Position numbers and translations under genes: made by a program. Positions 865 to 61,800 of a DNA stretch of 64,000 nucleotides are shown one piece after another. The stretch is from Thecamonas trahens ATCC 50062 (taxonomy: Eukaryota; Protista; Apusomonadida): contig NW_013657657.1 of assembly GCF_000142905.1 (NCBI RefSeq), positions 1-64,000 of the forward strand, read 5' to 3'. How positions within the stretch are numbered: the stretch's first letter is position 1; every line of letters begins with the position of its first letter. Below the pieces are notes generated by a model, which made no database searches, was not told the DNA's origin, and saw only the letters and a list, made by a program, of their open reading frames with translations.

Positions 865-930
865 AGCTGATGCCTCGTCAACCCTAGCTGATGCCTCGTC
901 AACCCTAGCTGATGCCTCATCAAGCCTAGC
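860..930. repeat. 21-bp tandem repeat (ACCCTAGCTGATGCCTCGTCA x3 plus partial) at the telomere/subtelomere junction
   Basis: Units at 860-880, 881-901 and 902-922 (one mismatch), partial unit at 923-930. Confidence 0.95.
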
Positions 931-43564: not shown

Positions 43565-43876
43565 TCCTCTCGCTCTTGTTCTCTCTACCCCCTGTCTTCC
43601 CTTCCTCTCGAAGAGTCAAGTGGTCCCCACCGCTGCCACCACCACCACCCACACTCGCTCCGCACACGCTCCGCACTTGCGCAGCCTTCCACCGCCAACC
43701 CCCCCCCCCCCCTCCCACCCCACCAAAAAATATTTCCCCCCACCCCCCACCCCCACCCCCCTCTCCTCACCCCCCTCTCCTCCCCCCCTCCCTCTCCCCT
43801 CCCGCTTAACCTCGCACTCACGGTTACTCTCTCCACCACCCACTCCACCCGCCCGCCCACCCACTCACCCACTCTC

Positions 43877-46800
43877 ATGGAAACTACCGACGCGCGTGTA
43901 GAGTGGCTCTCGTCACGGCTGCGGCTGCTGCTGCCGGGCTTGACGCAAGCACACATAGCTGTAGCACTGACGCCGGCGCGGTTTGCAGAGCCTGTGGCGG
44001 CCTTCCTCGACCGAGCCGACCTCTCGACGGCTCGGCTCTTTGCCTGGCTCGACACACCGGCTGTGGCCGATGCTGTAGTCTCTGCCAACACCTCGGCGCT
44101 GAAAGAGTCGTATGGTGCTGACGAGCCCGAGCCCGACCGGGTCGTCGCGAGCGGTACAGCGTCTACCATCGTCCGCAAGCCGGTCCGCCTTGCATCGTCG
44201 GCCACCTCGGCCTCGTCCACCTTTGAGCTTGTCCTCTCGCCGCTCCCGCGGTCTTCGTATGCCTCGACCGCGGTATTCTTTCTCAAGATGCACCCCAACA
44301 CTAAGCTCAAGCACTACAACATGGCGTCCGAGGTGGCGAGCGGCACGCTCGGCGACGACTCGCTTGTTCAGATGTCTGCACTCGCCCACGAGGTCCTCAT
44401 GCCCATCCTCACCAACTCGGCCCACCAGGAGGCCTGGTCTGATGTCAAGGGCAAGCTTGAAGAGACCATGCACGCCTTTCTCGGCCAGACTTACGTGACT
44501 GTCGGCCAGACGCATGGCCAGACCCTCCTCCCACTCCCGCCCATCGACATGTCGTCCATCCGCATCGAGAAGGAGAAGCTGCACATGCTCGAGACCGCCA
44601 TTGTCATGTGGTCGAAGCAAATCAAAGGCGTTCTCCGCGCCTCGCCGCAGGACCTCCTCCGCCGCGAGGGCATGCCCGGCCCGCTCGCCGAAGTCACGTT
44701 CTGGAAGGGCAAGCTCCGCGACCTAGTCTCGATCGACGAGCAGCTTAACGGAGTCAAGATTCGCAAGGTCCTCCGCATCCTCGAGGCCACGCGCTCCACC
44801 TTTGGCTCCGCATTCACCTCCAAGGTGTACAAAGAGGTCGAGCTCGCCCGTCGCGAGGCTGCGGACAACGCCAAGTTCCTCACTCCGCTCGAGCCGTGGT
44901 TCGCCCGTCTCGACGCCGTCGCTGAGTTTGACTCGATCATGCGAGTCATCATCCCCATCCTCCACCTTCTCGTCCTCATTTGGAAGCACTCCAAGTACTA
45001 CCACGACCCCGACGCCAACTGGGCCGTCATGATCCGCCTCCTCGCCAACACCATCATCACCAAGGGCACCGCCCACCTCAAGGCCGCACGCCTCTTTGCC
45101 AAGCCGCCCGACGCCGCCGTCGCCGCCATCAAAACCGTCCTTGTCGTCGCGCAGCGGTTCAAGACGCTCCAGCGCGAGTATGCGCTCAAGGCCCAGGCCG
45201 TTGCTCCTGCAGAGGCGTGGAAGTCGATCACCACCACCATCTTTCGCCGTCTCGACGCCTTTATTGCCCGCGTCTACGATGTCCACGCCATGTTCTCTAC
45301 CGCCGTCCAGTTTGGCTCCATCGCCTCGATCGAGATGGGCGGCATCCACGGGAGGAGCCACACCCAGTCGGTTCACCAGATCTATGCAGACTTTGTCCAC
45401 GCCCTCCGCTTCTTCGAGACCATTCCCTATGATCTGTTTGACCTCGACGCTACCGCCTTTGATCGCGACTTTTATGTCTTTCGCACTACAGTCAAGGAAC
45501 TTGAGCGCCGGACCGCCACCGTCATCCTCAAGGGTTTTGACTCGCTCTCTACCATCCACGACGCGTTCAAGCTCCTGCACCTCTTTGACGGCGTCCTCCC
45601 GCGCGAGCTTATCCAGATCGAGCTCACTGCCAAGCACGACGCCATGCTCGACTGGACCATGCTCGACATCCAGACCGTCTCGCAAGAGTTTATGCGCCGC
45701 CGCGACATGCGAAACCCGGCGCCGCACCTCAAGAACATGGTTTCGCTCGCCGCCAAGCTCTTCTGGGTCAAGGGCCTCATGTCGCGCGTCCGCCTCCCCA
45801 TCGAGTACTTTAACAACTACTCGAAGGACTTGCTCGCAGACTCGGACAAGGGCAAGACCATCCTCTCCATGTACACCAACCTCGTCCGCTCGCTCAACGA
45901 GTACCAGCTCCAAGTCCACTCGGCCTGGTTTGACTCGTTTGCTGTCTCCTCGCTCGCGCTCAAGGCTCCGCTCCTCACCCGCCTCTCCGAAGATGCCCAC
46001 TCCACCATGTACACCCACGTCCGCGCTCTTCCAGCGCTCAAGGCCATGCACGCAGACTTCAACTCGTCAGCAGCCACCGCCCTCCTTGCCTCGGCCGCCT
46101 CGCCTGGACCGTCGTCGCCAGCACCAACCTTGGCAGGCTCTGCGCACATCTCAGTCGAGCACGCGACAGCTTCGCCCGGCCTGCTTCTCTCGCTCCCGCA
46201 TAAGGTCGCTCCGCCGCTTCCGGACACTACTCCGCTCCCTCTCAGACACCGCCGCCCCTCGCTCGGCTCTAACGCGAGCTCGCCCCGTGCAAAGTCTTCT
46301 GCCGCCTCGCCATGGGCTATCCCACCACCGGCCCTTCTTCGCGTCAACTTTCCCATCGAGCTCGTTCGCGCTCTTGCTGAGACCCGCGCGTGCATTCTGC
46401 TCGGCGCCGCCGTCCCCGACGCCGCCTTTGGTCTCGCCGACAAAGCTCACGAGCTCGTCGCCCACAAGACAAATCTCGAGATTATTGTCCGCAAGTACAA
46501 TACCATTCTGCTCGACCTCGAAGCCGTCGAAGTCCCACTGTTTGCCTTTCACATCGAGCGCCTCAACCAGTTCCTCTCCGACGCCGAAGTTGTCCTCAAC
46601 TGGAAGTCGTACGGCATCCTTGAGTTTGTCTCCTCCGCCCGCACCTACCTCGAGGAGCTCTCCGAGTCGCTCTCACAGGTCAAGGCTCTTTCGGCCTACG
46701 TCGAAGAGTCTGTCGCGGCGTGGCGTGCAAACCCGCTCTTCCACCGCGTCGCCAAAACCTACCACGTCCTCGACTTCCTCGACCAGTACTCTGTCCTCCG

Positions 46801-49800
46801 TGCAACCGTCTGCAACATCATTGCGTCATCGGCAGACTCGATCCACTCGCGACTTGTTCAGGCTAATGCTGCTCTCGGCCTCTCGCGCGGCGATCCGGCC
46901 TGGAAAGCGTACATTGCGCACCTCTCTGCAAAGGTCGAGGCCGGCCTCCACGACACTGTCGTCGCCTCGCTCGACTACCTCCTCACCCAGCTCATTGCCG
47001 CTGACATCGACTCGGACGATGAAGCTCCTGCGGTGCGCAGCTCCGAGGCTAGCCGTGGAACTCCGGGGGCTGAACGCCAGACGCATGTCTCCGGCGACGG
47101 CCGCCACCCGCAGTCGCGCTTCGCCGCCGCCGCCGCAGCAGCAGCCTCGGCTGCAACGTCCATCATGGGCAGGGTTGGCGCCGGCCCGTCTGACGACCTC
47201 CGCCTCATTCGCGCAGGTGGCAAGGCTGGCAGTGCCAAGTTAGCCGGCATCGTCACCGACCGCTCTGGGGCCACTGCAGTCGCTTACCTCCCGCTCCTCG
47301 AAATCAAGCTCGAGCTCGTCGGTACCAACGTGTTGTTCAATCCTGCTGTCGCCGACAACGGTGTCGACGGGACCACCACCATGGTTCGCGGCTGGATCCG
47401 CGACTTTATCGCCATCGGTGATCTCATCCCACGTCTGGACAACCCAAGTACCACGTACGCTCCGGCCATCGCCGCCTCGCCGCACGTCCGCGAGCTCTCG
47501 GAAGCCATCCTCGCCACTGCGATTGAGACCGAGTCGCAAGCAGCAGACGTCGCCACCGACTTTCACTCGTACTCTTACTTGTGGGAAGACGACATCGAGG
47601 CCGAGTGCACCCGGTTCACCTCTTCCACTGCAGCCGGCGAGTTGGCGGTCTCGGCTCTCGCCATAGGCGCCGCCGGCGCCGAGCTTCCCTGGCTTACCAA
47701 GCGCATCCGTCACGACGAGGCCTTTGCCGCCCTCACGGACTTTGTCACCGCCATCGACCGGCTTCACGTCCACCCCAACGGCCGCTCGCCAACCCTTCCC
47801 GAGTTTGAGGCTCTCATTCTCAAGTACCGTGATGTGCAGGACTCCATCTCGGAGCTGCCCAACTCGACCCGCGTCTCCTGGCTTCGCATCGATTTTAAGC
47901 CGTTCAAGCAAGCGCTCATCACTTGGGTCATGAAGTGGACCTTCTCCTACACCAACTACCTCACCTCATCGCTCTCGCTCGCCACCCGCTCGCTCAAGCA
48001 CTTTTGCTCTCTCGCAAGTGGCCAGCTCGCCACCCAGGTCGTGCCAGGAGAGACTCAATCCGAGTCCCTCCAGTCTGTCCTTCTCTTTGTCCGCGTCATC
48101 AAGAAGAACGCACCCCGCGTCGATGCCTCCTTCCGACCCATGACTGAGACCATCCAGCTCCTTGACCGCAACGGCATCCGCCTCTCCGCAGACGTCACCC
48201 GCCTCGTAGAGCGCCTTGACACCTCGTGGAAGGAGCTCAAGTCACAAGCCAACGCTGCGCGTCTCCGCTCCGAGCCGTTCATGCCTTCGGAGGCCGACAA
48301 GGTCAAGCTCGCCGTCCGCGCCTTTACGCAGGAAGAGCGTAACTTTCGCAGAACTTACCTCTCCGAGGCACCTTTTTCCCACGAGGTCTCTTCCTCAGCA
48401 GCCTTTCGGGTCCTGCATTCGCTCAACGCGACGCTCTCTGTCCTCGAGGCCCGCTCCGAGCGTCTATCCGAGCTGCAGGTCCTCTTTGAGCTTCTCCCGT
48501 CCGAGTACAAGAAGCTCGCCTGGTGCCGGACCGAGCTCACTCGTCTCAAAACCCTGTGGGACATCATTTTCATGGCTGAGGCTCGCTTCCGCCACTGGCA
48601 CGCCATTCCGTGGGACAAGGCCCGCGCCAAGCTCAGCGACATGGCGACACAGACCCGGGCGCTCAAGGACCAGCTCGTTACTCTCGCCGCCCCATTTGGC
48701 CGCTGGGATGCGTTTATCCACCTCGAGACTCGCGTCCGGGCCATGGACGTCGACCTGGATCTCATCTCCACCCTCGCCGTCCCGGCCATCCGCGACCGCC
48801 ACTGGAAGGCTGTCTCGCGTATTACGGGCTGTGTCATCGATATCTCGCCCTACACCCCGCTCCGCTCCCTCTTCAACCTCAACCTCCACGAGCACGCGCC
48901 CACCATCCGCGCTCTTGTCGACCGTGCCACCAAAGAGCTTGCTATTGAGTCGTCGCTCTCGCGCATCGCCTCGTCGTGGACGTCCACACTTGTCGCGACG
49001 CATCCGATGCCGCGAACGCCAGAGCCCTCACTCGCTCTTGTTTTTGACTCGGTTGTCGCCTACTTTAACGCGCTTCGTGACGCCCAACGCCTTGTTGTCC
49101 TTTGGCTCATCACGTCACCGTCCGCTGCTGCCGCAGCTGCAGACGTCGTACTCGCCACCGCCTCGGCACTCGGGCCAACTCCACCACCCGATGCGCCCTC
49201 GGCTCGCGTCTCGGTCGTCCCACACACCCCGATCTCACCAATGGCCCCATCGTCGCCCATATCGCCCATGGTCATCTCCTCGCTTCGTGGCGGCCCGCGC
49301 CAACTCCAGCCGCAGCCCCGGGCTCAGCCGCCCTCGGACTCGCTCAACCTCTCGTCGTCGTCAAGCAACATCCTCGCCCCAGCCCACTACCGACTTGGCT
49401 ACCCGACCCGCGCCGCGGTGGCCGCCGCTACCGAACTGTCCTCGGCCGGCGCCGACGCCGCTGCCAATGCTGGTCACGCTCGCTCAAGCTCGGGCGGCGG
49501 CCACCTCCACGCACCATCTGCCGGCCGCCACGGGCCGCTCGGCTCGTTTGTATCCGGCTCTGCACCGGGTCAGAACCAGGGCTCGGTCATGAATCGCGCG
49601 CTCCAGTTTATGATGGGCGGCCCAGCGGCCGCTGGCCGCGATGACATCCCTGAGCACGTGCCCAGGACTCAGCGGAGCCTTGGGCGAACGGCGTCTTCCG
49701 ACGCGCTCCAGCGAAACAGTGGCGTGCGCTCGTCGCGTACGCCGCGAACGCCGCGAACGCCGCGGACGCCGACCTCGCCGCTCACCCGCGTTGCAAACAC

Positions 49801-52800
49801 CAAGACAGCGTCGTCGCGTCACGTCGAGTTTGACCTCCCGGCCGAATCTGACGAGTCTGACGCTGGCGCTACCGATCCCGACGACGATGACGATATTTTC
49901 GTCACCACTCATCTCTCCGACGCCGACGCCGAGAGCGACGTCGATGACGACCAGTTTTTTGCCCTCCTTGAGTCTTCGAACCCGCGCCTCGCCGAGTCGC
50001 TCACATCAATGATCTCCACCGTGACTGCCGAGGGCGGGCTCGACGGTAGCAACGACTCGGATGACGACAATGTAGCCGGCGGCAATTTTGGTGACCATGT
50101 GCGTCACGAGCAGCTGCCGCCGCCACCGAGCCTCACCGTCACTCCAGGCAAGCTCACGCCCGAACTGCGCGAAGCCCTCGTCGACGTACGCAAGCTCGTC
50201 GAGGCTCTGGTGCCGGACGCAGCCTCGCGTGCTCGCATCCTCCGGCTTCGTCGCAAGGTCCGATCCGTAGCGTCGCCGGCGCCATCGGCGGTTCTTGCGC
50301 CACTCGGCTCGGTCTTCTCCTCGCTCAACGAGCACCTTGTCGAGCTCGAGCGTGTCCTCGCCTCGCCGCACGTCTCCATCTTTGCCATCGAGGTTGCCAA
50401 GTGGCAAGACAAGCTCAAGCAGGCGACAAAGGCCCTCGCGTCGATGCTGGCTGTCCAGGACATGTACCTCGCCAACTCATTTTGCTTCCTCCGCCTCGCC
50501 TCGGTCGCCACCCTCGAGTCGACCCTTTTACGTGCAGACTCGATCCAAAGCGCGCTCATGGGCTTCCTCTCTACCATTGCCACCGAGCTCAACACTCCGC
50601 TCGACGAGCTCCGCGCCAGCTCGCCGCACCTCAAGCGCGCGCTCGCTCTCCTCAAGCGGCCAAAGCCCTCGCTCGACTCGCTCGCCCGTTCCAACCCGGG
50701 TGGTTTTGACATCGAGATTGCTCGCTTCACAGGCATCGACAGCGAGTGGTCTTCGCTGATGTCGCTGGTCTCAAGCAAGACGACCAACGCGCTCGACCTC
50801 ACTACCCGTCCCGGCGTCCACGCCCACCTCGAGAACATGACAACCCAGCTCGAGCTCTGCCGCCACTCGCTCAACCTCTTTGCCGCCGCCAAGCAGTCAA
50901 TCTTCCCGCGGCTCTATCTTCTTGCGCCGGGTGAACTCCTTCAGCTTCTTGCTGCGTCGACCGTGCCGTACCTGCAGACTCGGCTTGTAGTCCCGCGGCT
51001 CTTCCCCGGTGTCCGCTACCTCGACTTTAACTTTCCGCTCGAACAGACCGCACCCATCACTGCCCGCTCGCCGTCGTCATTCTCACTCGCCTCCAAGTAT
51101 CGCAACATCATCGGCGTCTACGCCTGGTCGCAGCAGCGGGTCCCGTTTGGCACGGCTGTTCCCTCGGACGGCAACGTTGAAGACTGGCTCGCGGCCGTCG
51201 AGCACGCGCTCACCGCCACCGTCGCTGGCGGCATCTCGACAGCGCTCTCGTCGCTCCTGGCTTCGCCACTTGGTGCATCCTTTGGTGACGCGCTCGCTGC
51301 CGCCGGTCTCGCTCGCCCGCCCTCAGCACCGGCACCACCCCCGCGTTCTGGTCCGTCTTCAGGCGCTGCTACCGCCGCTGCCTCGTATGCCTGGCTCAAT
51401 CCGTGGGTCCAGAACCACACCACCCAGGCCGCCATCCTCGCGCTCTCCATTCTCTTCACCGCCCTCGTCGAGCAGTTCCTAGTGAGCTCGTCGCCGAACG
51501 CCCGGGCGCGGCCGCGGCTCCAGGCTCTCGGCCGCGAGCTCACTGCTGCGTCGGCTGCGCTCACCTCGATGCCACACCGAGTCTCGCGCCTTGATGCGCT
51601 CAAGATCTCGATGTTTCTTACCCGCGTTGTCGGCTTCCGTGACCTTCTCGAGCATCTCATCCTCAAGCACGTCGAGGCACCCAGTGACTTTCACTGGGCC
51701 TCGCAGCTGCGGTACTACGTTGAGGAAGGCACGCTCGTCGCCCGGATGTTCAACTCCGGGTTTACGTTTAAGAACGAGTTTGTCGATCTCGAGCGGCCCT
51801 TTATCTACACTCCGCAGACGCTCAAAGTCTTCCACGGCCTGGTCATGTCCATCGAGTCACGTCATCCGGCTGCCATCGTCGGCCCACACGATACCGGAAA
51901 GACCCAGACCATCACTGCCTTTGCCAACGCACTCGGCATGCCGATCTTCAAGGCCGTCGCCCTCCGCTCCACCTCGTACCTGCATCTTACCTCGCTGTTC
52001 AAGGCAACTGCTGCCTCTGGAGCCTGGCTTCTCATCGACTCGCTTGAAGTGGTGCCAGCCTCGATCCTCTCGCTTGTCTCTACCCTCCTCATGTCCATGT
52101 ACGCTGCGCTCCGAGCCAACGTCAGCGTCCTCGACTTTGATCCGGTCGTCGACCCCGACGCCCATACCGGGCCAAAGCGGGGGCCGGTCGGTGGCAAGAA
52201 TGCGGGCTCGGGCGCCAAGCCACCGGTCCATCCCGCGCTCTCGCGCCTTGGTCTGGAGTGGTCTGTGGCGCCTGAGCGCCGCTCGCTGCAAGTTCCGCTC
52301 CTCCCCTCGGCCAATGTCTTCATCACCTCACGCCCGATGCAGTCGGCTTCGGAGGCCTCCGAATCGTCGGCCACGCTCTCAGGCTCGTCTATCGCGTCGA
52401 CGCTCGGCGGCTCCACCTCCAACGGCGCCCGCGCCCGCGCCTCAACTGCAGGCTACGGCAACTTTGCGTCGGAGCTCGATGAGCTCGAAGCGCATGCCGC
52501 TGGCGAGACAAGTACTCGTGGTGGCGACGGCGATGGTGATGGCGGGAATGGACGCGAAAGCCGCGGTTCGCGCCAGCTCGACGCCTTTATCGGCACGTCA
52601 GCTCTTCTTCGCCCGGGCATCGGCCGGCAGGGCTCGGACGAGTCGAATCCAGCAGCGGCGACACTGTTGTCGCTGCCGGGTCTCCCACTCACCCTCTCGG
52701 CACAGTTCCGACCCATCGGCCTTGTCCAGCCCGATCACGAGATCATTTGCCGAGTCATTCTCGCCTCCAAAGGCTTTGTCAAGGCCGAAACTCTCGCCAA

Positions 52801-55800
52801 AAAGACGCTGGCCCTCTTCCGGCTTGCTCGCGAGCACATCTCACCCCAGGCGCACTACTGGTGGGGCCTCCGGCCGATGCTCTCGGTCGTCGAGCTTGCT
52901 GGCAGACTTCGGCACGCCGAGCCGGACCTCTCCGAGCTGCCTATTCTCATGCGAGCGCTTCGCGATTACAACACGCCCAAGGTGCTCTCTGGCGACACGG
53001 CACTCTTCCAGTCGGTTATCGAGGACCTGTTTCCATTCCTCGACCAGGAGCGCCAGCACGACATGCTCTTTGAGCGTGTCGCATCCGAGGTGCTCAACGA
53101 GTGCGGCCTGCAGCCGACCGAGGCCTTTCTCAACAAGCTCTATCAGCTGTATCAGAGCCTCTCGCTCTCGCGGATGGTACTTGTTCTCGGGCCGACCGGC
53201 GTCGGCAAGACCACGCTGTGGAAGGTGCTCGCCCGAATTGTCCCTCGCCTTGCCGCCGAGCTGGGTGGCGACATGGCTGCCAAGGCCTCTGCTTACGCGG
53301 CAGCCTCGGGCGTCTCGCTCAACGATACATCCCTAGCCTCGCTCCACGTCACTTTTGGCCTGCCCGGCGAAGATGGGACAACAGCTTCGGACGACGGCTC
53401 TGACATGGGCTCGTCCGTCGCCACCGCTTGCGACCGTGAGCATGAGCCAGCAGGAGACCCCTTCGCCAGCTTCCTCGACTCGTCGATGGTGCCGGGCGGG
53501 ACCGGCATGAGCGCCTCGTTCTCTGGTACCGGAGGCGGCAAGGCTCATGTCCCCACCTCCGGCTCCAACGCCGAGCTCCGTGACAACATTCTTGGTATCG
53601 ACTACGCGCACCAGACCTTAGACAATGGCGACGAGGCCGGCCTCCCGGGCCTCGCGTGGATCCACAACATCGCGCTCTTCACCAAAGTCCGGACCACGCT
53701 CATCTGTCCAAATGCGCTCCCGCTCAAGTATCTCATGGGCCACGAGGTCATTGATACCGCATCCAAGCAGCGGCCGCTGCCTGCCGGGTGGACAGACGAC
53801 GCCCACAACCCACCGCCCAACGTGGCCATCAATGCGTCACGGTACTCGGACGGTGTGCTCCCGCTGGCCGTCCGCCGCGCACTAACCCGCTGCTCGTCGC
53901 ATGTGTACGAGTCCCTCGCTCGCGCCCGTGCCAACGCCGCACGCGGTGCCGGCGCTGTCGACTCGGCGTCAGCCCCCGACCCGACCGGCCGGCCGTCCAC
54001 CGCCGGCACTCGTCCGAGCTCAGCCGCGTCGGCTGCGTCGGCGGCCTCGGTCACGCTGTCCGACATTGTCGCCGACGTTCTTGGCGGTGTTGCCGTCTCC
54101 AACGGGCGTGGCTTCCGGCTGGTACCGATGGACGTGGCCGGCGAGTGGATTGTGCTCGACGGCGACATTGCGCCCGAGTGGGCCGACGTCCTCAGCTCGG
54201 CCTTTGACGAGGCCCGCGCCGTTCCGCTGTCGTCGAACGAGCGGCTGGTGGTCGACCCGGAGCATGTGCACTTTGTCATCGAGTCGAACCATCTCGTGCA
54301 CGCCTCGCCGTCGACCATTGCGCGTGGTGCAACGGTGTATGTCAACGGGACCGACGTCGACTGGAAGGCGTATGTGCGGGCCTGGCTCCGCCGCCGTCGG
54401 TCGCGCGAGGAAGAGGCCATTCTCTCGTCACTCTTCCAGTTCTACATCGACGACGTCCTCACCTTTGTCTGTTCGCCACGGTTCGTCCCGCAAATGACAC
54501 CCATGGCCGCGGTCGAGCGCTTCTGCCGCATGCTCGAGGCACTTCTCGTCCCGCAGCACTGCCCGCTGGGCTCGCCCAAAACCGACTATGAGGCCTACTT
54601 TCAGTTTGCCTGCATCTGGGGCCTCGGCGCGTCGCTTGTCAACACCCGGACCTCCGACTATCAGCACGAGTTCTCCGAGTGGTGGAAAACCGTCTTTCGC
54701 GAGGTTCGCTTCGAGGACGGCGGCTCGGTCTTTGACTATTACGTCCACGAGTCAAAGAAGCTCATGGTGCCGTGGGAGGAGGCGACGCCGTCGTGTGTTC
54801 TCGAGCTCATCGACTCACAGGATCTGTTTGTACCCACCAGCGAGGCCATCAAGGCCGCGTACATGCTCAAGCTCACCATGGACGCCGGCATCCCCACGTT
54901 GGTGGTCGGTGAGCCCGGTGTCGGCAAGTCGACTGTCATCCGCTCGTACATCCGTTCCATTGAGGACTCGCGGGTTAGCTCCAAGTTTGCAACATGGAGC
55001 GCAGCAACGTCCGTCGAGGATGTGGAGGCCTTTGTCACGTCGGCGCTGCAGTTTTCGTCCGGCAGAGTCCTGGGCCCGCCGGCGACCAAGTCGATGATTC
55101 TTTACATTGACGACATGAACATGCCGAGTTCGAGCCATGTCTATGAGCTTCTCCGCCAGATTCTCGACCACAAGACCATGTATGCCTCCTCCGAACTGGC
55201 TGCTCGGAGTCCAGTGGCGTCGGCGCAGCTCCATCCGTGGCACGTCCGCGGCGTCCAGGTTGTTGCCGCCATGGACCACCTCATGTCGCCCATGTCTGCG
55301 CTCTCAGCCCGCCTCCTCCGGCATTTTTCGCTCGTCACCTTTCCCTACCCGGAGGAGGCCTCGCTCCGCGAGCTGGCGTCCATCTTTCTGGGCAAGGCCT
55401 CGCCGGTAACCTTTGCGTCGGGCCTCGACGGCATGCGCCTTGGCCTTGTCAACGCCACGGTCGAGGCTCACGAGACGCTCCGTCGCCGGTTTGTGGCGCG
55501 CGGCACACGCGCACACTACCTGTTCAAGGTCAACGACATTGGCGATGTCTTTCGTGGCATGGGCCTCGTTCTCGCCGACGACATTCTTGCCGACCCGACT
55601 TCGCTCGTTCGCCTCTGGGCCTACGAGCTCGCGCGAGTCTATGGCGATCGCCTCATCTCGGCCGCCGACCGCAATCTCTTTGAGCACCTCCGTCGCAACC
55701 TTGTTTCCAAGTACTTTGAGGTGGTGACCCCGGCGGCGGTCTTTGCCCACGAACCTGTTTACGCCCACGCGTCGCTCTCGGCTGCTGTCGATCTCGACAT

Positions 55801-58800
55801 GGCCCAAGGCCAGGGCGATGACAGCGCCAGCCTGCCCGGCTCTGCGCTCGAAGGCCAAGGTCTCGGCGACCGCACCCCTGGCCAGTCCACGAGCTTTGGC
55901 CTTTCGATGTCACTGGGAAACCCCGGCCTTCTCATCCCGCACCAAGGTGTAGGTGGTGGTGCAGGTGGTGGCGGCTTTGCGCTTGCTCACCCAGGACGTG
56001 TCAACTCGATGATGCTCGCCACCTTTGCTACCACCCCGCAAGCGATGACTGCCCGTGGCGGGCTCTCGTTTCTGCCGCCTTCCGGCGAGAGCAGCGGCGA
56101 CATGGCGTCCAACGTGCTCACCGCCATTCTTGCACGGTCGTTCTCGCCGGTTCTGCCGGGCATGTGGATGCTCGTCGGCGGCGGCGCGACCGGAGTAAGC
56201 GGCAGCCTAGCTGGTAGCGGCGGTGAGGCCGCACTGGGGGTACAGCAGGCGACGCCGATGGATTTGCTGGTGACAGGCCTCGCATGGCCGAGGCCGAGCT
56301 CAGCCGGAGCGCAGGCGCCGGTTCCAGTTCGCCGTCCAAGGCACCGACCGCGTCGCGCGTTAGCAGCCTGGTGGGGCATGATGACGGCGACGCGAGCTCG
56401 GTGGGCCAGAGCCCATCGCTCCTTGCCGGAATTGAGTCTGCCGGCCTCCTTATGTCGCCGTGGACGGCGTCGGGAGCCTCGCGCAGCTCGGAAGGTCAAG
56501 TGGGGAGCAGCTCGCAGTTTGTCGCCATGCATTCGGGCGGCTACTTTCGAGAACTGCTGCTCGGCTCAATGCTCTCGGATCGTGGTCTGGCGATCAAGCT
56601 GCAGGAGCTCTCGTATGCTGGCTCATTGGTTTTTGAATCGTTTGTCATTGCACCGCTCCGCGGCTCGTTTGCGGCCCACAGTACGTCGAGCACGCGTGGT
56701 GTCGACGCCCGTCACCCGCCGCAACGACCAAGCCCGCGGCCGGTGCGCCAGTTTGAGCATGCAAGTGGGGAAAGGACTCGCCTGCAGCGGGACACACTCG
56801 GGCGCGGCCTGCAAATGGGTCGCGTCCCGCCGCCGGACCCCGTCTCCACCCTCCACGAGCCGCTGGCGTCTCTCTTTCGCCTGTTGTACCTCGATGTTGA
56901 GGCCGCCGTCGGTGGCTCGACGCCAAGGCGGGAAGGGGGACGGGCAACACCAGAATGGGCCTGCCCTCCAGCCGCTATGGTGGAACCAAGGCCGATCACG
57001 CGATAGATGAGCTGTTGGCGCGAGCTGGAGCTATGCTTCGCAAGTCGCAGTCATTCTGTGGCCTACTGGCCGATTCATGGCGGCAGCTCCAGGTGCCAAC
57101 CCAAGCGCCGGAGCCGGCCATCACCGCGTTGCGGACGCCACTGCGGCTGCTCGGCGTGGCGCGTCCGCGATCGGTCTTCCACAACATGCCCCACATCGAG
57201 GCTGCGATTGCGTCCGGCATGCTGTATCCCAAGCTTGCGGAGCACCTCTCGCACTTGCTTCGGATTGTGGAGCTCAACCTGAGCCATGCCATTGTGGTGG
57301 GCGAGCAAGCCGGGTTTGTCACCTCGATGGCTGCGGTGGTTGCCGGGACGCGGCTTGTCCGCTTTCCACAGACCGTCGACTACGAGGCCTTTGTCACTGT
57401 CTTTTCCGAGGCGCTGCTTGAGGCTGGCGTCCACGGCGTGCCGCAAGTGGTGCAAATCGACATCGAGCATGTGCTTACCGGTGCGGCGTGGGAGCGGCGG
57501 AGGCGGCCGTTTGGCGAGTCAGGCTCGTCATCGACGCCCTCGGGCGAAGCAGCCACCACGCCGGATGGTAGAAGCGCGTCGGCGGGCGAAGGATTTGCCG
57601 GTGACGGCAACAGTGACAGCGGCGGTGCACTTCCGATGGACGTCGACGTGCTAGCGCGGCTCAACGAATTTGTCTCGACCGGCAACGTGGCATCGCTGTT
57701 CTCGGGCGACGATCGCGGGCACATCACCCGGGCGCTGCGGTCGCAGGCAAAGTCGCGGGGCATGGTCGACTCTGTGGAGGTCTGCTGGGAGTTTTTCCTC
57801 GCCAACATTGCAGAGAATCTCACTCTTGTGCTGTGCGTCACCGACTCGTCCGGCAAGTCGCTCGGCTCGCTGATGCGCCAGTTCCCGACACTGGTGCACT
57901 CGATGTCGCTCATGTGGATGTCGCCGCTGCGGCGGGCGGACTTGACGGCCATTGCGCTCGAGTCGCTGGCTGACTTTGACATGGGCAGCCACATGTCTGC
58001 TGCTGACCGCGAGAACGTGGCGCATCACCTGGCGATGGTCTTTGAATCCGTCCGCGCCAAGCAAGCCGAGCTCGGAGCGTACGAAGAACTCATGCAGAGC
58101 CGGCGGTCCGACGGCGGTGGGGTGCGGTCGAGTGGACGGCGCGCGCGGTCGACAGCAGCACGCGGCGGGCTCGCGGGCTCAAGCTCGGGCGCCGGGCCGG
58201 CCGGCGGCTCGGGGGGCGGAGGGTCAGGACCTGGCCTCGGTCTCTCGTACCCGGTGGCGCCGATGCGATCGTTCTTTGTCCTCCTCTCCAACTTTAAGGC
58301 CATTTTCACGGAGCAACGACTGCAGCTCTGGTATGCAGCTGACAAGCAGGCTGTGGCGCAGAGCAAGGTGGAAGAGCTCGACGCGTTTGTAGCGTGGCTC
58401 GACGCCTCGCTCAAGCGCGAAGAGTCAGTCTTTGCCATCAAAACGGCGGCGACTGACAAGCTGCTCTCGCAGGTTGGGCGTGACCGCGGCCTCAAAGAGC
58501 AGCAAGTGGCCAAGGCTGCCAGCGAGCAGGAGCTTGTGGCCGAGCTCAAGTTCCGCCTCTCGGAGCTAAGCTCCGAGCTCAACGAGGCGCGTGCCTTTGC
58601 GCGGCCGCGCTACGAGGCGGCGCTGACGGCACTGGAGAGTCTCAACAAGGTCAACGTCACCGAGCTGCGAACAATGGTGAATCCGCCGCGGGAGGTCCGC
58701 GCCGTTGTTGCCGCCGCCGTCGTTCTCGCCTCCAACTCGGGGGCGGAGACCGATGTGCGGTGGTCACTGTGCAAGCGGATGATGGCGCAGGTCGACGCGT

Positions 58801-61800
58801 TTGTGGCACGACTGACCAGGCTTGATCCGCATGTCATCTCGGGTGAGTGCGCTGCCGAGGTGATGCGGTACACCGACATGCCTTTCTTCTCAAAGGAGGG
58901 TCTCCGGCTGGCCGGAACGGCAGTGGCGGCGCTCGCCGACTGGGTTGTCTCCATCATGTCGTACCACCACGCGTATCAGGAGGTACTTCCGGTGGAGAAC
59001 GAGCTTAACAAGGTCCGCGCGAGCCTCGAGATGGCGCAGACACGGGTGCTCTCGCTTCGGGAGCGGGTCGATGAGCTCGGAGGGCGCATCCAGGTGCTTA
59101 CGGCCTCGTTTGAGGTCGCATCGTCGGAGAAGATCACCCAATCGCAAAAGGTAGTCGAGATCCGCGACCAGCTCGAGAAGGCCCGCCGTGTACATAGTGT
59201 CCTCGCGCCGCTCTCGTCCGAGTGGAGGCTTGGCGTACTGGACATCGGCTCGCGCATCTACGCGCTCGTTGCCGACGCGCTTCTCGCGGCGTCATTTGTC
59301 ACGTTTGCTGGCCAGTTTGACGAGACCACACGTGCCGAGCTGATGGACTCGGTGTGGAAGCACGACTTGCAGCAGCGGGCGTTCCCGGTCTCTGAGCACG
59401 TACCTGGCGTGGCGCTGCTGACGAGCATGGAGGATGTGCTCCGGTGGCAAACGCTCGAGCTCGACGACAACATGATGCTGACCCAAAACGTGACCATTTT
59501 GCTCAACGCAGTTCGAACTGTGGTCCTCATCGATCCAGCACACTCGCTAGTCGCCTTTCTCAAGCGGCTGTACGACGACCTCGGCATGCGGCGCAAGGCT
59601 GCAGCGGCAACGCTTCAATCGTGGGTCATGAACGTGGTTGCCGGCCAAGCCGCCGCCGGGCGAAAGAGGAGCTCGACAACCAACGCCGGAGCCAAGGCCG
59701 AGATGACCAATGCGCGTGGCTCGCAACGGACACGCAATCGCATGGCGCGTCTGAGACGGATGAACTCGACGACACCAGGGGCATCGATCTCAAACTCGGT
59801 GTCCCCATCGGTCTCGCGGTCGCGATCTCGGTCGCGGTCACGGTCGCGCTCGCGGTCGCGGTCGCGGTCGCACACACGGGCACAGCACCGGGTGAGGCAA
59901 CGCGCGGCAAAGCAGTCGCACACGAGCGAGTCGAGCTCGACAAGCTCGAGCTCGATCAGCAGCGATGGCAGCGATGGCAGCGATGGTTCCGAGAGCGAGA
60001 CGGACGGGTCGTCGGACTCGTCTCATGGTCACTTTTTGCGATCGATCCACAATTCGGCGGCATCGCTGCTGGCCTCGGTCTCGTCGGGCGTGTTGGCTGA
60101 CGCTGCCGATGCTTCGCAGACTATTGTGGAGGCTGTTGAGGCGGCACTGCTCGCGCTTGCGACGCCGAGTCGGGAGTTGAGCTCGGTGTTGAAGGAGCTC
60201 GCCAATGAGGGGCCGGCGGCTGTAGCTCAGTTTGTCGATGCGCTGCTGCCACCTGCACAGAGTGTGACGATTCTCAACTGGGAGACCAAGTCGCGCGGCC
60301 TCCTCCGAACCCAACTGGAGAACGCGGTGACGCATGGCTCGCTTGCTCTGTTCCTTGTCTCGGATGCGTCGCTAGTGCCAGCCGAGCTGGAGGCGCTGGT
60401 GGCGCGCCGAACGGTGACTGAAGGCGGGACCAAGTACGTGTCACTGGGCGAGGGGACCAAGGTTGAGTTTAACGACGCGTTCCGGCTGGTGGTGGTGGTG
60501 ACCGAGTGGTGCTTGCCGCTGGAGCCTGCGTGGCTCCGGCCGCACGTCAACGTAATCAACGGCGTTCCGCTTGAGGTTGCCCTCGAGTCGCGACTTTTTA
60601 TGTCGTCGTGTACCGCGCTGATGCCTGGGGTGCTTGCTGACGAGCGGATGCTCGCGGGTGCGTGGCTGGATCTTTCTGCGGCCAGCGAGCGGCTGGCGAA
60701 CGCGCTGCTCCACCATGTGGCGTACACGCCGCTGGTCTCAGCCGACTTTCACGCTGAGCACTTGTTCAACTTGCCTCCTGGAGCCGGGCCGCCGCGGCCA
60801 GCGCGCGGGGATCGTACAGTCCGGCCTGTGCGCGGAAGCAATGACGATGGTGGAGGCGAAGATAGGAGCGGGAGAGGACTGGCAGCCGGACCGGCGGAGC
60901 GGCGGCGGCGGATGCTGCGGCGTGGCGAGTCGATTGCGCGGCTGGGCGCGGGGCGGGCGTCCAGCTCGGAGCTTTCGCGGCGGGGCACGGCGTCGATGAC
61001 ATCGCTCGGTGAGAGCGGCGAGTTCCCGCTCCGGTACAACTCGATCTTTTCGACAACTGACTATGTGCGTGCGGCCGAGGCTGCCGACATGGCGGCTGGG
61101 CCGTTTGAGTCGCTTGTGGAAGGATTTTCCAAGCTCTCGCACCTGGTCAAGCTCAAGCTGACGGTGGAGGAGACAGTGGAGGAGGTGGAGAACGCCAACT
61201 CGATGCGGCAGATGGAGCTCGAGGCGCTGCGGCCGCTTGCGGCGCGCGGGCGGCTGGTGCACTCTGTCTTTACCCGGTTTGCGCGCCTCGACGAGCTGCA
61301 GGACTACGATGTCCGGCTCTACCTTCGGGTGTACTCGTCGATTGTGGACGAGTTTGCGCGCGAGTCGGGGCTGCTTAGCTCGGACCGAGTCGGTGAGCTT
61401 GTGGGCCAAGTCACGCTCTCGCTGTTCCGGATGTATCTTCGCGGCCTCTCGCGCGAGACCAAGGACGTGGCCGGTCCTGTCCTCTGTTTCTCGATCATGC
61501 TTGCCGAAGGCAGCCTCACCGACACGCAGATGGCGTTGCTTGTGGCACCTGAAGGCGGCGAGGACGGATCGGTGCGCAGCGGAAGCGGCAGGAGCGGGGG
61601 CGTGGAGAACAACCCGCTCTCGCCGTACTTTTCGCTCGAGCAGTGGCGTGCGCTTCACGCGCTCTCGAACACACACGAGGGCGACCTGTCGCAGCTCTCG
61701 CTGGTGGTGCTCGGCGCGCCGGAGGTGTGGTCGCGATGGGCGGTGCAAGACGCGCCCGAGGCGGTGCCGCTGCCGGGCGAGTTTGGGCGGGTGTCGGACT

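What the first reader, a model, noticed from the sequence alone, without database searches (positions are those of the whole stretch)
51860..52900. Dynein heavy chain with an apparently dead AAA1 site: candidate pseudo-motor
Seen: the AAA1 Walker A reads GPHDTGKT (canonical GPAGTGKT). The Walker B reads GAWLLIDSLE (canonical GAWGCFDEFN), so the catalytic Glu is replaced by Ser at ~52040. Sensor I reads FITSRP (canonical FITMNP). The AAA4 P-loop is lost (HAIVVGEQAGFVT). AAA2/AAA3 P-loops, stalk, MTBD and C-terminal domain are retained over ~20 kb of reading frame. Established: AAA1 hydrolysis is essential for dynein motility. Inference: a non-motile dynein kept as a microtubule tether, brake or scaffold, derived from the outer-arm beta (DNAH9/11/17) class as judged from AAA2/AAA3 signatures.
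Basis: partly seen in the sequence, partly recalled or inferred. Interest (0 to 1): 0.8.

Follow-up and report, generated by a model that had tools for sequence, protein, structure and literature searches.

The report
Outer-arm-type dynein with dead ATPase site
This is an intact, giant dynein heavy-chain gene of the gliding flagellate Thecamonas that keeps an outer-arm-type tail and a normal microtubule-binding stalk but lacks the residues needed to burn ATP at its main motor site. It belongs to an old, little-studied family of such "non-motor" dyneins that is also found in many aquatic animals.

Summary
AAA1 reads GPHDTGKT (51881-51904), GAWLLIDSLE (52019-52048, Ser at 52037-52039) and FITSRP (52319-52336). 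The AAA4 P-loop is lost. The AAA2 and AAA3 P-loops, the stalk/MTBD and the C-terminal domain are kept.

- The roughly 20.6 kb gene lies in three frame pieces and runs off the window.
- It carries about 2,500 residues of open, low-complexity insertions.
- The genome (Thecamonas trahens, per an earlier scan note) has a separate canonical outer-arm beta gene.

The frame changes are probably assembly indels, because the canonical beta gene shows the same defect.

The tail keeps 88% of the near-invariant outer-arm-beta positions. AAA1's large domain keeps 34%.

Tail and motor trees place the gene with an ichthyosporean protein and a 5,200-6,100-residue family of aquatic animals. Every member examined lacks the AAA1 Walker-B Asp-Glu. 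A recent duplication from the canonical gene is rejected (p-AU 3e-17).

A second Thecamonas gene has a gamma/DNAH5-type tail, a similarly dead AAA1 and no recognisable stalk.

Prior art exists. Kollmar (2016) listed Thecamonas "orphan" dyneins next to his classes 12 and 13. Chai et al. (2025) showed that sea-urchin DNAHX is non-motile.

Verdict: a real gene and a new member of a known kind. The scan also flagged a degenerate dynein elsewhere in this genome.

The parts
43376..57007 (+). Frame piece 1 (4544 codons): N-terminal extension, tail (DHC_N1), linker (DHC_N2), AAA1, AAA2, AAA3 and part of a long insertion
   Evidence: ORF list. Pfam hits DHC_N1 386 bits, AAA_6, DHC_N2, AAA_7 and lids. 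No in-frame stop, against 48 and 88 stops in the other two frames.
44237..45982 (+). Tail region of outer-arm beta type, the region that in canonical arms carries dimerisation and intermediate/light-chain contacts
   Evidence: tblastn HSP to Allomyces beta. PDB search with the tail alone gives Chlamydomonas beta 480 bits, Tetrahymena beta 407 and the next class 172. 88% of near-invariant beta columns are kept, the same as canonical controls.
49076..50722 (+). About 490-residue low-complexity insertion inside the linker
   Evidence: Gap between HSPs. Open in frame. Rich in Ala, Ser, Leu and Pro.
51881..51904 (+). AAA1 Walker A, GPHDTGKT. It still fits GxxxxGK[ST], with His-Asp where canonical chains have Ala-Gly
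52019..52048 (+). AAA1 Walker B, GAWLLIDSLE. Asp is kept and the catalytic Glu is replaced by Ser (52037-52039)
52118..52681 (+). Divergent, insertion-bearing stretch between the Walker B and the AAA1 small domain. It holds the sensor-I remnant FITSRP (52319-52336); the GYAGR arginine is absent
52682..53236 (+). AAA1 small (lid) domain, well conserved. Includes FRPIGLV at 52706-52726 and WWGLRP, carrying the sensor-II-position Arg, at 52859-52876
   Evidence: 152-bit stretch to PDB dyneins. 68% of near-invariant columns kept. Coordinates.
53189..53212 (+). AAA2 Walker A, GPTGVGKT, intact
54311..54331 (+). AAA2 segment STIARGA. It keeps the Arg that aligns with the canonical 'VSRAG' arginine facing the AAA1 site
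   Evidence: The role of this residue is from general dynein knowledge and was not tested.
54908..54931 (+). AAA3 Walker A, GEPGVGKS, intact. The Walker B LYIDDMNMP at 55100-55126 matches canonical beta chains. Sensor I is changed (AAMDH at 55265-55279, where canonical chains read MNP)
55769..57638 (+). About 500-residue insertion between AAA3 and AAA4 that contains the first frame change (must lie within 56901-57007)
56955..62897 (+). Frame piece 2 (1981 codons): AAA4, stalk/MTBD, AAA5 and AAA6
   Evidence: ORF list. Pfam hits MT 145 bits, AAA_8, AAA_9, AAA_lid_11 and Dynein_heavy.
57285..57323 (+). AAA4 P-loop remnant, HAIVVGEQAGFVT; the Gly-Lys is lost
58266..59564 (+). Stalk coiled coils and microtubule-binding domain of canonical length
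   Evidence: Pfam PF12777, profile positions 13-341 of 344. Indel-free alignment with conserved VTELRTMVNPP and W..CKRMM..VDAF motifs.
59565..61220 (+). About 360-residue extra insertion in AAA5. It includes the RS/acidic-Ser tract that another first-stage note flagged
62585..62897 (+). Zone in which the second frame change must lie
   Evidence: Stop maps of the three frames. Homology ends at 62705 in one frame and resumes at 63047 in the other.
63047..64000 (+). C-terminal domain (frame of piece 1). The gene runs off the window end
   Evidence: tblastn HSP to reference residues 4265-4521 of 4537 at 63047-63982.

Best explanation
The locus is an intact gene of about 6,900 codons for a dynein heavy chain. 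It descends from the outer-arm beta lineage and has given up ATP hydrolysis at AAA1.

It is not the organism's working outer-arm beta chain, which is encoded elsewhere. It is the apusomonad member of an old paralogue family shared with Ichthyosporea and many aquatic animals. That family very probably corresponds to the neighbourhood of Kollmar's class 13.

Shown here:
- The tail is under beta-type constraint.
- The AAA1 catalytic residues are gone, while the P-loop Lys/Thr, the Walker-B Asp, the sensor-II-position Arg and the AAA2 arginine remain.
- The AAA2 and AAA3 P-loops are intact and the AAA4 loop is lost.
- The stalk and MTBD have canonical length.

Inferred:
- The protein assembles through its tail with the usual intermediate and light chains. 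Its heavy-chain partner is probably the gamma/DNAH5-derived, equally AAA1-dead chain at C47:111609-132033.
- AAA1 may hold nucleotide without turning it over, so the head is fixed in one state and produces no power stroke.
- It therefore acts as a non-force-generating subunit that can still bind microtubules. Its role would be structural or regulatory, either on the axoneme or during dynein delivery.
- Whether the fixed state binds microtubules strongly (a tether or brake) or weakly cannot be told from sequence.
For: Motifs and their canonical counterparts.

Open frame:
- 4544 + 1981 + about 390 codons with no in-frame stop.
- The inter-HSP stretches of ORF1 total 1606 codons with 0 in-frame stops, against 24-30 in the other frames.
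- GC3 is 0.76-0.78 against GC2 of about 0.50, like neighbouring genes.

Domain-wise retention of near-invariant beta columns:
- Tail N-terminal part 88%, AAA1 large domain 34%, AAA4 33%, AAA5 37%.
- Canonical controls keep about 69-100%.

Class assignment.

Canonical beta elsewhere in the genome: C17 is 53-63% identical to a chytrid DNAH9.

Family placement:
- Tail tree clade with Chromosphaera, Owenia, Ostrea and Crassostrea at 97/94.
- Motor tree gives the same clade at 99.
- The AU test rejects pairing with the canonical Thecamonas beta, p = 3e-17.
- None of the 37 further metazoan family members nor Chromosphaera has the Walker-B Asp-Glu.

Candidate partner (C47b):
- Gamma-type tail, 603 bits.
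- Walker A GPPSSGKS, Walker B LDGIH, sensor I lost.
- No PF12777 stalk hit.

Literature:
- Kollmar 2016 (PMC5100056) reports Thecamonas orphans basal to classes 12 and 13, with tails like outer-arm classes 3 and 4, and proposes a heterodimer at the outer-arm position.
- Chai et al. 2025 (PMC11785096) show by cryo-EM that sea-urchin DNAHX has an ATP-locked, non-conserved AAA1. It pairs with a second heavy chain that has a normal stalk.
Against: - There is no expression, proteomic or biochemical evidence for this gene.
- No close orthologue was found: at most 37% identity among 1.84 billion representatives. dN/dS therefore cannot be computed.
- The two frame changes could be real lesions.
- Ours, Chromosphaera and C47b have long branches and deviant composition, so some attraction in the trees is possible (warnings).
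The same applies to equating C47b with DNAHX/class 12.
- The P-loop still fits GxxxxGKT and a Glu lies three residues after the Asp (IDSLE), so residual hydrolysis is not excluded.
Confidence: 0.7

Rival explanations
1. The protein is still an ATP-driven motor. AAA1 hydrolyses ATP with substitute residues, for example the Glu in IDSLE, or another site such as AAA3 drives a modified cycle. On this view the sequence changes tune motility rather than abolish it.
For: - Walker A keeps GK-T and the Walker-B Asp is kept. A Glu lies three residues downstream. The sensor-II-position Arg and the AAA2 Arg are kept.
- The AAA2 and AAA3 P-loops are intact, and the AAA3 Walker B is identical in type to canonical beta.
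- The stalk/MTBD is conserved in length.
- Kollmar 2016 assumed that the divergent heads give 'different bending characteristics'.
Against: - The Walker-B Glu, the sensor-I Asn and the GYAGR Arg are all lost at once.
- Only 34% of near-invariant AAA1-large-domain columns survive.
- The whole family lacks Asp-Glu, and in echinoderms even the P-loop Lys is gone. This argues that hydrolysis at AAA1 is dispensable for the family's function.
- The only member of a comparable class examined by cryo-EM (DNAHX) showed no post-power-stroke state (PMC11785096).
Confidence: 0.12
2. It is a decaying pseudogene. The degenerate motifs, the insertions and the two frame changes would be relics of a duplicated outer-arm beta gene that is no longer used.
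For: - Two frame changes.
- Motor branch about 4.5 times the median length.
- GC3 lower than in the canonical dynein genes: 0.76-0.78 against 0.86-0.89.
- Three insertion stretches have a flat GC1/2/3 profile.
Against: - About 6,900 codons carry no in-frame stop apart from the two frame switches. The expectation from the other frames is about one stop per 60-90 codons, so the chance of zero stops in the 1606 inter-HSP codons is about e^-27.
- The canonical, clearly functional beta gene at C17 has two frame changes of the same kind with uninterrupted homology. Assembly indels therefore explain them.
- The tail keeps 88% of invariant positions.
- The same degenerate state is conserved in relatives across Obazoa.
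- A recent duplication is rejected.
Confidence: 0.05
3. It is non-motile, as in the best explanation, but its place of work is not the axoneme. Together with the gamma-derived chain it would form a 'dynein-X'-like phi particle that keeps other axonemal dyneins inactive and carries them on IFT trains during flagellar assembly, as Chai et al. proposed for DNAHX.
For: - The Thecamonas pair mirrors the cryo-EM description of dynein-X. One chain is derived from the outer-arm alpha/gamma class and has an abnormal stalk: C47b has no PF12777 hit. The other chain has a normal extended stalk (ours).
- The listed taxa of the beta-derived family are aquatic invertebrates, cnidarians and frogs, with no reptile or mammal among the hits. 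This resembles what the preprint reports for DNAHX.
Against: - The transport role is itself only a proposal in a preprint.
- The second chain of dynein-X was not identified there. Mass spectrometry pointed to DNAH6/7, or could not exclude outer-arm chains.
- Our chain keeps beta-type tail positions as well as canonical axonemal betas do, and it keeps a conserved MTBD. These fit docking on doublets at least as well.
- The orthology of C47b with DNAHX was not tested, because no DNAHX sequence was in hand.
Confidence: 0.25

Closest known systems
Beta-derived giant dynein heavy chains of aquatic animals, annotated 'dynein beta chain, flagellar outer arm-like' or 'uncharacterized protein' (e.g. Owenia, Crassostrea, Asterias, Strongylocentrotus, Branchiostoma, corals, frogs), plus the Chromosphaera perkinsii protein. 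Very probably Kollmar's class 13 (DHC13) and the 'Thecamonas orphan' basal to it (PMC5100056)
   Same: - Outer-arm-beta-type tail.
- Clade in both the tail and the motor trees.
- AAA1 Walker-B Glu lost and sensor I and GYAGR lost.
- AAA2 and AAA3 P-loops kept in the five members aligned.
- AAA4 P-loop lost in ours and in the three animal members aligned.
- Recognisable MT stalk (Pfam lists).
- Extra length, with insertions in AAA5 and the linker.
   Different: - Identity is only about 25-33%.
- The insertions are at different positions and are much larger in ours: about 2,500 residues, for about 6,900 codons in total.
- Ours keeps the most canonical P-loop (GK-T), the Walker-B Asp, the sensor-II Arg and the AAA2 Arg. 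The animal members have lost most of these.
- The C-terminal low-complexity extension typical of class 13 could not be checked, because the gene runs off the window.
DNAHX and the dynein-X complex of sea-urchin sperm (Chai et al., bioRxiv 2025, PMC11785096)
   Same: - An outer-arm-derived heavy chain with many disordered insertions.
- A non-conserved AAA1 that keeps features compatible with nucleotide binding.
- Proposed to be non-motile and part of a two-headed complex.
   Different: - DNAHX derives from the outer-arm alpha (DNAH5/8) lineage and ours from beta.
- DNAHX keeps a Walker B and has a disrupted stalk/MTBD. Ours has lost the Walker-B Glu and has a normal stalk/MTBD.
- The DNAHX-like chain in Thecamonas is the other gene (C47b).
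- The preprint states that DNAHX is absent from protists.
Canonical outer-arm beta heavy chains (Chlamydomonas ODA4/beta, DNAH9/11/17; Thecamonas copy at C17:273877-287443)
   Same: - Best-matching class over the whole length and in the tail.
- Same domain order.
- Same 'DD' Walker B at AAA3.
- Same stalk length.
   Different: - Canonical chains have GPAGTGKT, DEFNR and TMNPGYAGR at AAA1 and GVGGSGKQ at AAA4.
- They are about 4,450-4,650 residues long.
- Their motor evolves more slowly than their tail. In ours the motor branch is 1.73 against a tail branch of 1.23.
DNHD1 (human 'orphan' dynein heavy chain; Kollmar's class 11)
   Same: A dynein heavy chain with a poorly conserved AAA1 that lacks catalytic Walker-B residues and carries disordered insertions, according to PMC11785096.
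   Different: It is a different lineage. No specific relationship was seen or tested here, and ours has a clear outer-arm beta tail.

Membership tests
Dynein heavy chain (general) | Tail (DHC_N1), linker (DHC_N2), six AAA modules in order, a stalk/MTBD between AAA4 and AAA5, and a C-terminal domain | tested here: met
   Pfam hits on both ORF pieces. A C-terminal HSP at 63047-63982. Collinear with Allomyces beta from residue 83 to 4521.
Canonical outer-arm beta class (DNAH9/11/17, Chlamydomonas beta; Kollmar class 4) | Beta-type N-terminal tail | tested here: met
   The tail alone scores 480 bits to Chlamydomonas beta against 172 to the next class. 88% of near-invariant columns are kept.
Canonical outer-arm beta class (DNAH9/11/17, Chlamydomonas beta; Kollmar class 4) | Catalytically competent AAA1: GPAGTGKT, Walker-B DE, sensor-I N, GYAGR | tested here: not met
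   The sequence reads GPHDTGKT, IDSLE and FITSRP, and no GYAGR arginine is present.
Canonical outer-arm beta class (DNAH9/11/17, Chlamydomonas beta; Kollmar class 4) | Groups with the species' canonical beta and with opisthokont betas in phylogeny | tested here: not met
   It is inside the wider beta family (100/100) but in a separate clade. Pairing with the Thecamonas canonical beta is rejected, p-AU 3e-17.
Beta-derived AAA1-degenerate family (taken to be Kollmar's class 13 plus basal orphans) | Beta-type tail combined with a divergent motor, and a phylogenetic grouping | tested here: met
   The clade has 97/94 support in the tail tree and 99 in the motor tree. Kollmar reports the same placement for Thecamonas orphans.
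Beta-derived AAA1-degenerate family (taken to be Kollmar's class 13 plus basal orphans) | Loss of the AAA1 Walker-B Asp-Glu | tested here: met
   Ours reads DS. The 37 further animal members and Chromosphaera read NN, NK, DN, ND, KE and similar.
Beta-derived AAA1-degenerate family (taken to be Kollmar's class 13 plus basal orphans) | Longer AAA5 domain (Kollmar 2016) | tested here: met
   There is an excess of about 357 residues between reference positions 3529 and 3725. The animal members have AAA5 insertions at other positions.
Beta-derived AAA1-degenerate family (taken to be Kollmar's class 13 plus basal orphans) | Low-complexity C-terminal extension (Kollmar 2016) | not testable with these tools
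Beta-derived AAA1-degenerate family (taken to be Kollmar's class 13 plus basal orphans) | Identity of the proteins found here with Kollmar's DHC13 set | not testable with these tools
   No supplementary files are held for the paper, so the equation rests on matching descriptions.
DNAHX subfamily (Chai et al. 2025) | Derivation from outer-arm alpha (DNAH5/8) | tested here: not met
   Ours is beta-derived. The gamma/DNAH5-derived chain is the separate gene C47b.
DNAHX subfamily (Chai et al. 2025) | Insertions that disrupt the stalk and MTBD | tested here: not met
   The stalk/MTBD aligns without indels.
DNAHX subfamily (Chai et al. 2025) | Pre-sensor-II insert in the AAA4 small domain that contacts the C-terminal cap | not tested
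   No structure was predicted and no DNAHX sequence was available.

The most novel reading that the evidence does not exclude
Thecamonas carries a complete pair of 'dead-headed' outer-arm-type heavy chains. One is this beta-derived gene with a normal stalk. The other is the gamma/DNAH5-derived C47b, which has no recognisable stalk. They would be orthologous to the animal beta-derived giant family and to DNAHX respectively.

If so, the non-motile 'dynein-X' complex predates animals and goes back at least to the common ancestor of apusomonads and opisthokonts. The unidentified second chain of sea-urchin dynein-X would then be the beta-derived family member.

Together with two AAA1-degenerate inner-arm-type genes (C35, C24), this would be a shadow set of non-motor axonemal dyneins. 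It might be used in only one of the cell's two dissimilar flagella.
Probability: 0.35. Interest if true: 0.7.

Novelty: new member of a known kind. Interest (0 to 1): 0.5.

Why it matters
Dynein heavy chains that have given up their motor site are only now being recognised: DNHD1 in human sperm and nodal cilia, and DNAHX in sea-urchin sperm.

This locus shows a beta-derived counterpart in a protist sister lineage of opisthokonts, beside a gamma-derived one. Every relative examined lacks the AAA1 Walker-B Asp-Glu. This suggests the loss is old and maintained rather than a recent decay.

That runs against the preprint's view that such chains arose within animals. It also nominates a concrete candidate for the unidentified partner chain of dynein-X.

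Thecamonas has one beating and one gliding flagellum and can be cultured. It could therefore serve to test what a non-motor dynein arm is for.

Tried and rejected
- **Trypanosomatid origin.** This was my first guess from the GC content and the intronless look. I dropped it once the earlier scan note named Thecamonas, and PDB scores favoured Chlamydomonas over trypanosomatid beta.
- **Frame changes as pseudogene evidence.** Rejected, because the canonical beta gene at C17 has two such changes with continuous homology.
- **Frame changes as introns.** Not resolved. Homology does not cross either zone. The 'gaps' I inspected in other Thecamonas dynein genes turned out to be in-frame low-complexity insertions, not introns. 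I therefore had no verified splice consensus to apply.
- **Close orthologues for dN/dS.** None found. The word-indexed search of 5.8 billion proteins gave at most 33% identity. The exhaustive HMMER search of 1.84 billion representatives gave at most 37%. The gene's own annotated product did not appear in either.
- **Complex prediction.** I tried it for the N-terminal tails of this chain and C47b. It was unavailable, so nothing was folded.
- **DNAHX in the PDB copy.** Not found by name among hits to the C47b motor.
- **Kollmar's supplementary data.** Not held.
- **C20 mixture-model tree.** It did not finish in time, so LG+G4 was used instead.
- **C14a.** This locus could not be assigned to a class.
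- **Joined gene model.** No joined gene model was handed to any search tool. All tool queries used single-frame references. The three frame pieces were joined only inside scripts, with X at the two switches, for alignment and trees.

Full report
**What is at the locus**

The window starts in a telomere, with CCCTAA repeats at 1-870. An earlier scan note attributes the genome to the gliding flagellate Thecamonas trahens. The genome is G+C-rich and the dynein genes I looked at contain few or no interruptions.

The finding lies in ORF 43376-57010, which has 4544 codons. Pfam finds DHC_N1, DHC_N2, AAA_6 (AAA1), AAA_7 (AAA3) and lid domains in it. The next ORF, 56955-62900, is in another frame and carries AAA_8 (AAA4), the MT stalk, AAA_9, AAA_lid_11 and Dynein_heavy.

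A tblastn search with a canonical outer-arm beta chain (Allomyces, P0004) shows one collinear gene. It runs from reference residue 83 at 44237 to residue 4521 of 4537 at 63982, and the last piece is back in the first frame.

So the gene spans about 20.6 kb and about 6,900 codons, and it runs off the window. It has two frame changes, which must lie within 56901-57007 and 62585-62897.

**Check of the observation**

- AAA1 Walker A: GPHDTGKT at 51881-51904.
- AAA1 Walker B: GAWLLIDSLE at 52019-52048, with Ser at 52037-52039.
- AAA1 sensor I: FITSRP at 52319-52336.
- AAA4: HAIVVGEQAGFVT at 57285-57323.

In an alignment with 12 canonical beta chains the counterparts are invariant: GPAGTGKTETTKDL, WGCFDEFNR, FITMNPGYAGR and GVGGSGKQS. 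All twelve canonical dynein AAA1 loci in the same genome carry the canonical motifs, so the changes are specific to this gene.

Several residues survive:
- The P-loop Gly-Lys-Thr and the Walker-B Asp.
- The Arg of WWGLRP, at the position usually called sensor II.
- The Arg of the AAA2 'SRAG' segment.
- The AAA2 P-loop (GPTGVGKT) and the AAA3 P-loop (GEPGVGKS).
- The AAA3 Walker B of the canonical beta type (IDDMNMP).

**Real gene or wreck?**

Apart from the two switches, no piece has an in-frame stop.
- Over ORF1 the other two frames hold 48 and 88 stops.
- The stretches between homology blocks in ORF1, which are largely insertions, total 1606 codons. They have 0 in-frame stops against 24-30 in the other frames.
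- Codon-position G+C is coding-like. GC3 is 0.76-0.78 and GC2 about 0.50, as in neighbouring genes, although GC3 is lower than the 0.86-0.89 of the canonical dynein genes.

The canonical outer-arm beta gene of this genome lies at C17:273877-287443. It is 46-51% identical to Allomyces beta. It also shows two frame changes, with uninterrupted homology across them. This assembly therefore contains frame-shifting indels in genes that must be functional. The two switches here are not evidence of decay.

I could not decide between an indel and an intron at either site.

**Anatomy relative to canonical beta chains**

I counted how many columns that are near-invariant among twelve canonical betas are kept by this protein.

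| Region | Kept |
|---|---|
| Tail, N-terminal part | 88% |
| Tail, C-terminal part | 78% |
| Linker | 55% |
| AAA1 large domain | 34% |
| AAA1 small domain | 68% |
| AAA2 large domain | 51% |
| AAA3 large domain | 48% |
| AAA4 | 33% |
| Stalk/MTBD | 54% |
| AAA5 | 37% |
| AAA6 | 42% |
| C-terminal domain | 55% |

The 88% in the N-terminal tail equals the leave-one-out canonical controls. Across all regions those controls keep about 69-100%.

So the part that in canonical arms makes the heavy-chain, intermediate-chain and docking contacts is conserved as in a working arm. The ring is not, and it is least conserved at AAA1-large and AAA4.

The stalk and MTBD align without indels and keep recognisable motifs.

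Eight inter-block stretches total about 2,500 residues, about 2,000 more than the matching reference segments. They are rich in Ala, Ser, Gly, Arg and Pro. They lie in the tail, the linker, AAA1 (between the Walker B and the lid), AAA2, between AAA3 and AAA4, AAA4 and AAA5. Low-complexity insertions also occur in canonical Thecamonas dyneins, including at the same AAA1 position in C14b. Insertions as such are therefore a habit of this genome.

**Class and relatives**

Against solved structures the whole piece scores as follows:
- Chlamydomonas beta 1090 bits, DNAH17 943 and DNAH9 908.
- I1-beta 569 and outer-arm gamma or alpha about 460-490.

With the tail alone, beta scores 480 against 172 for the next class. 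The 120 best of 5.8 billion proteins are all beta-class, at 33% identity or less. An exhaustive HMMER search of 1.84 billion representatives gives nothing above 37%.

The genome has about 17 dynein AAA1 loci, twelve canonical and five degenerate. A canonical beta sits at C17, 53-63% identical to a chytrid DNAH9. This gene is therefore a paralogue.

Among the database hits I found other beta-like proteins with degenerate AAA1. One is from the ichthyosporean Chromosphaera perkinsii (P0245). The others are 5,200-6,100-residue proteins of annelids, brachiopods, molluscs, nemerteans, echinoderms, amphioxus, corals, a tunicate and frogs.

The trees give a consistent placement:
- A maximum-likelihood tree of tails (31 rows, LG+G4) puts our gene with Chromosphaera, Owenia, Ostrea and Crassostrea at 97/94 support, inside the beta family at 100/100.
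- A FastTree of the motors gives the same clade at 99, with a long-branch warning.
- The AU test rejects a tree that pairs our gene with the canonical Thecamonas beta (ΔlnL 92, p = 3e-17).

Every member of the family that I examined lacks the Walker-B Asp-Glu. That covers 37 further animal sequences, Chromosphaera and ours. Most have also lost sensor I, and echinoderms have lost even the P-loop Lys. The AAA2 and AAA3 P-loops are kept in the five members I aligned.

The dead AAA1 is therefore shared across the family and looks like an old, maintained state.

**A likely partner**

A second degenerate locus, C47:111609-132033, has these properties:
- Its tail is of the outer-arm gamma/DNAH5 class: 603 bits against 190 for the next class.
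- In both trees it pairs with an unnamed degenerate protein (P0261), sister to the canonical DNAH5 class.
- Its AAA1 shows the same pattern as ours. Walker A is GPPSSGKS. Walker B is LDGIH, with Glu replaced by Gly. Sensor I and the GYAGR Arg are lost, and the AAA2 arginine is kept.
- It has no Pfam MT-stalk match.

Two further degenerate loci are of inner-arm type. C35 is DNAH1-like and C24 is DNAH6-like. C14a could not be assigned to a class.

**Literature**

Kollmar (2016, PMC5100056) surveyed dyneins of 636 species.
- The tails of those classes resemble outer-arm classes 3 and 4. Class 12 has an aberrant stalk and class 13 a longer AAA5.
- He proposes that the two may form an outer-arm-like heterodimer.
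- He states that the ATP sites were not analysed.

Chai et al. (bioRxiv 2025, PMC11785096) purified 'DNAHX' from sea-urchin sperm.
- It is an outer-arm-alpha(DNAH5/8)-derived chain with many insertions and a disrupted stalk/MTBD.
- Its AAA1 is non-conserved and holds ATP, and only the pre-power-stroke state was seen.
- It forms 'dynein-X' with an unidentified second heavy chain that has a normal stalk.
- They consider DNAHX absent from protists, and they liken it to DNHD1.

Our gene fits the beta-derived counterpart (class-13-like) and C47b the DNAHX/class-12-like chain. I could not confirm these equations with the authors' own sequences.

**How it most likely works**

Shown:
- A beta-type tail under normal constraint.
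- A ring that has lost the hydrolytic residues of AAA1 and the AAA4 P-loop.
- Retained nucleotide-binding-type residues at AAA1, AAA2 and AAA3.
- A normal-length stalk and MTBD.

Inferred:
- The chain joins an outer-arm-type complex through its tail, probably with the gamma-derived dead chain.
- AAA1 binds but does not turn over ATP, so no power stroke is produced.
- The head acts as a fixed-state, microtubule-facing element.

If AAA1 is ATP-locked as in DNAHX, the canonical coupling predicts weak microtubule affinity. If the site is empty, the opposite holds. Sequence cannot decide between these.

A role in keeping other dyneins inactive during delivery, as Chai et al. proposed, is a live alternative. 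A link to the non-beating, gliding posterior flagellum is my own speculation.

**Verdict**

It is not a lineage-specific pseudo-motor. It is the apusomonad member of an old outer-arm-beta-derived family in which every examined member lacks the AAA1 Walker-B Asp-Glu.

The existence of such Thecamonas orphans (2016) and of non-motile dynein heavy chains (2025) is already published. Three points are added here:
- The residue-level state of this gene.
- The family-wide loss of the Walker-B Glu.
- The presence of both a beta-derived and a gamma-derived dead chain in a protist.

Procedural note: all database and structure-bank queries used single-frame references.

Noticed in passing
G000:C47:111609-132033 (loci L027-L029): A second AAA1-degenerate heavy chain. 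Its tail is of the outer-arm gamma/DNAH5 class (603 bits). Walker A is GPPSSGKS, Walker B is LDGIH and sensor I is lost. There is about 800 nt of extra sequence between the Walker B and sensor I. It has no Pfam MT-stalk hit and at least two frame changes around AAA1. It is a candidate DNAHX/class-12-like chain in a protist.
   Followed up: partly
G000:C35:7637-22262 (L033-L035) and G000:C24:61006-75528 (L030-L032): Two inner-arm-type heavy chains with degenerate AAA1. C35 is DNAH1-like, with GEHSTGKT and INDVD. C24 is DNAH6-like, with no recognisable Walker A. With C14:86657-102475 (GPAATGKT, LDEVD, class unclear), five of about 17 dynein genes in this genome have a non-canonical AAA1.
   Followed up: partly
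G000:C17:281166-281175 and 286424 (L022-L023): The canonical outer-arm beta gene changes frame twice with uninterrupted homology to reference proteins. This indicates frame-shifting indel errors in the assembly, and it matters for any pseudogene call in this genome.
   Followed up: yes
window 1-930: A telomeric CCCTAA array with scattered G-runs and T-runs that look like sequencing errors. It is followed by three copies of a 21-nt unit (CCCTAGCTGATGCCTC(G/A)TCAA) at about 866-925.
   Followed up: no
Proteins P0270/P0220 (Diplonema papillatum 'Dynein beta chain') and P0149: A separate beta-family clade has a changed AAA1 (Walker B reads FEDIN in the Diplonema protein; sensor I reads FATLNREYA). 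It exists alongside a canonical Diplonema beta (P0119). This looks like an independent case of a degenerate beta paralogue in a euglenozoan.
   Followed up: partly
Proteins P0391-P0423: The beta-derived giant family is found in annelids, brachiopods, molluscs, nemerteans, echinoderms, amphioxus, corals, a tunicate and frogs. No reptile or mammal member appeared among the hits listed. The preprint reports a similar distribution for DNAHX, which fits the idea that the two chains work together.
   Followed up: partly
G000:C14:326847-327073 (L012/L013, L039), window 52118-52681, C47:118173-118987: A low-complexity insertion sits at the same place in three Thecamonas dyneins, between the AAA1 Walker B and sensor I. 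One of the three is a canonical gene (a Gly/Ser-rich in-frame stretch in C14b).
   Followed up: no
Proteins P0308, P0311, P0314, P0322, P0174: A group of environmental dynein sequences keeps the Walker A but has FIT(M/L)(Y/H)QDY(D/E) in place of FITMNPGYA at sensor I. One of them has Walker B LDQFN. Their origin and class are unknown.
   Followed up: no
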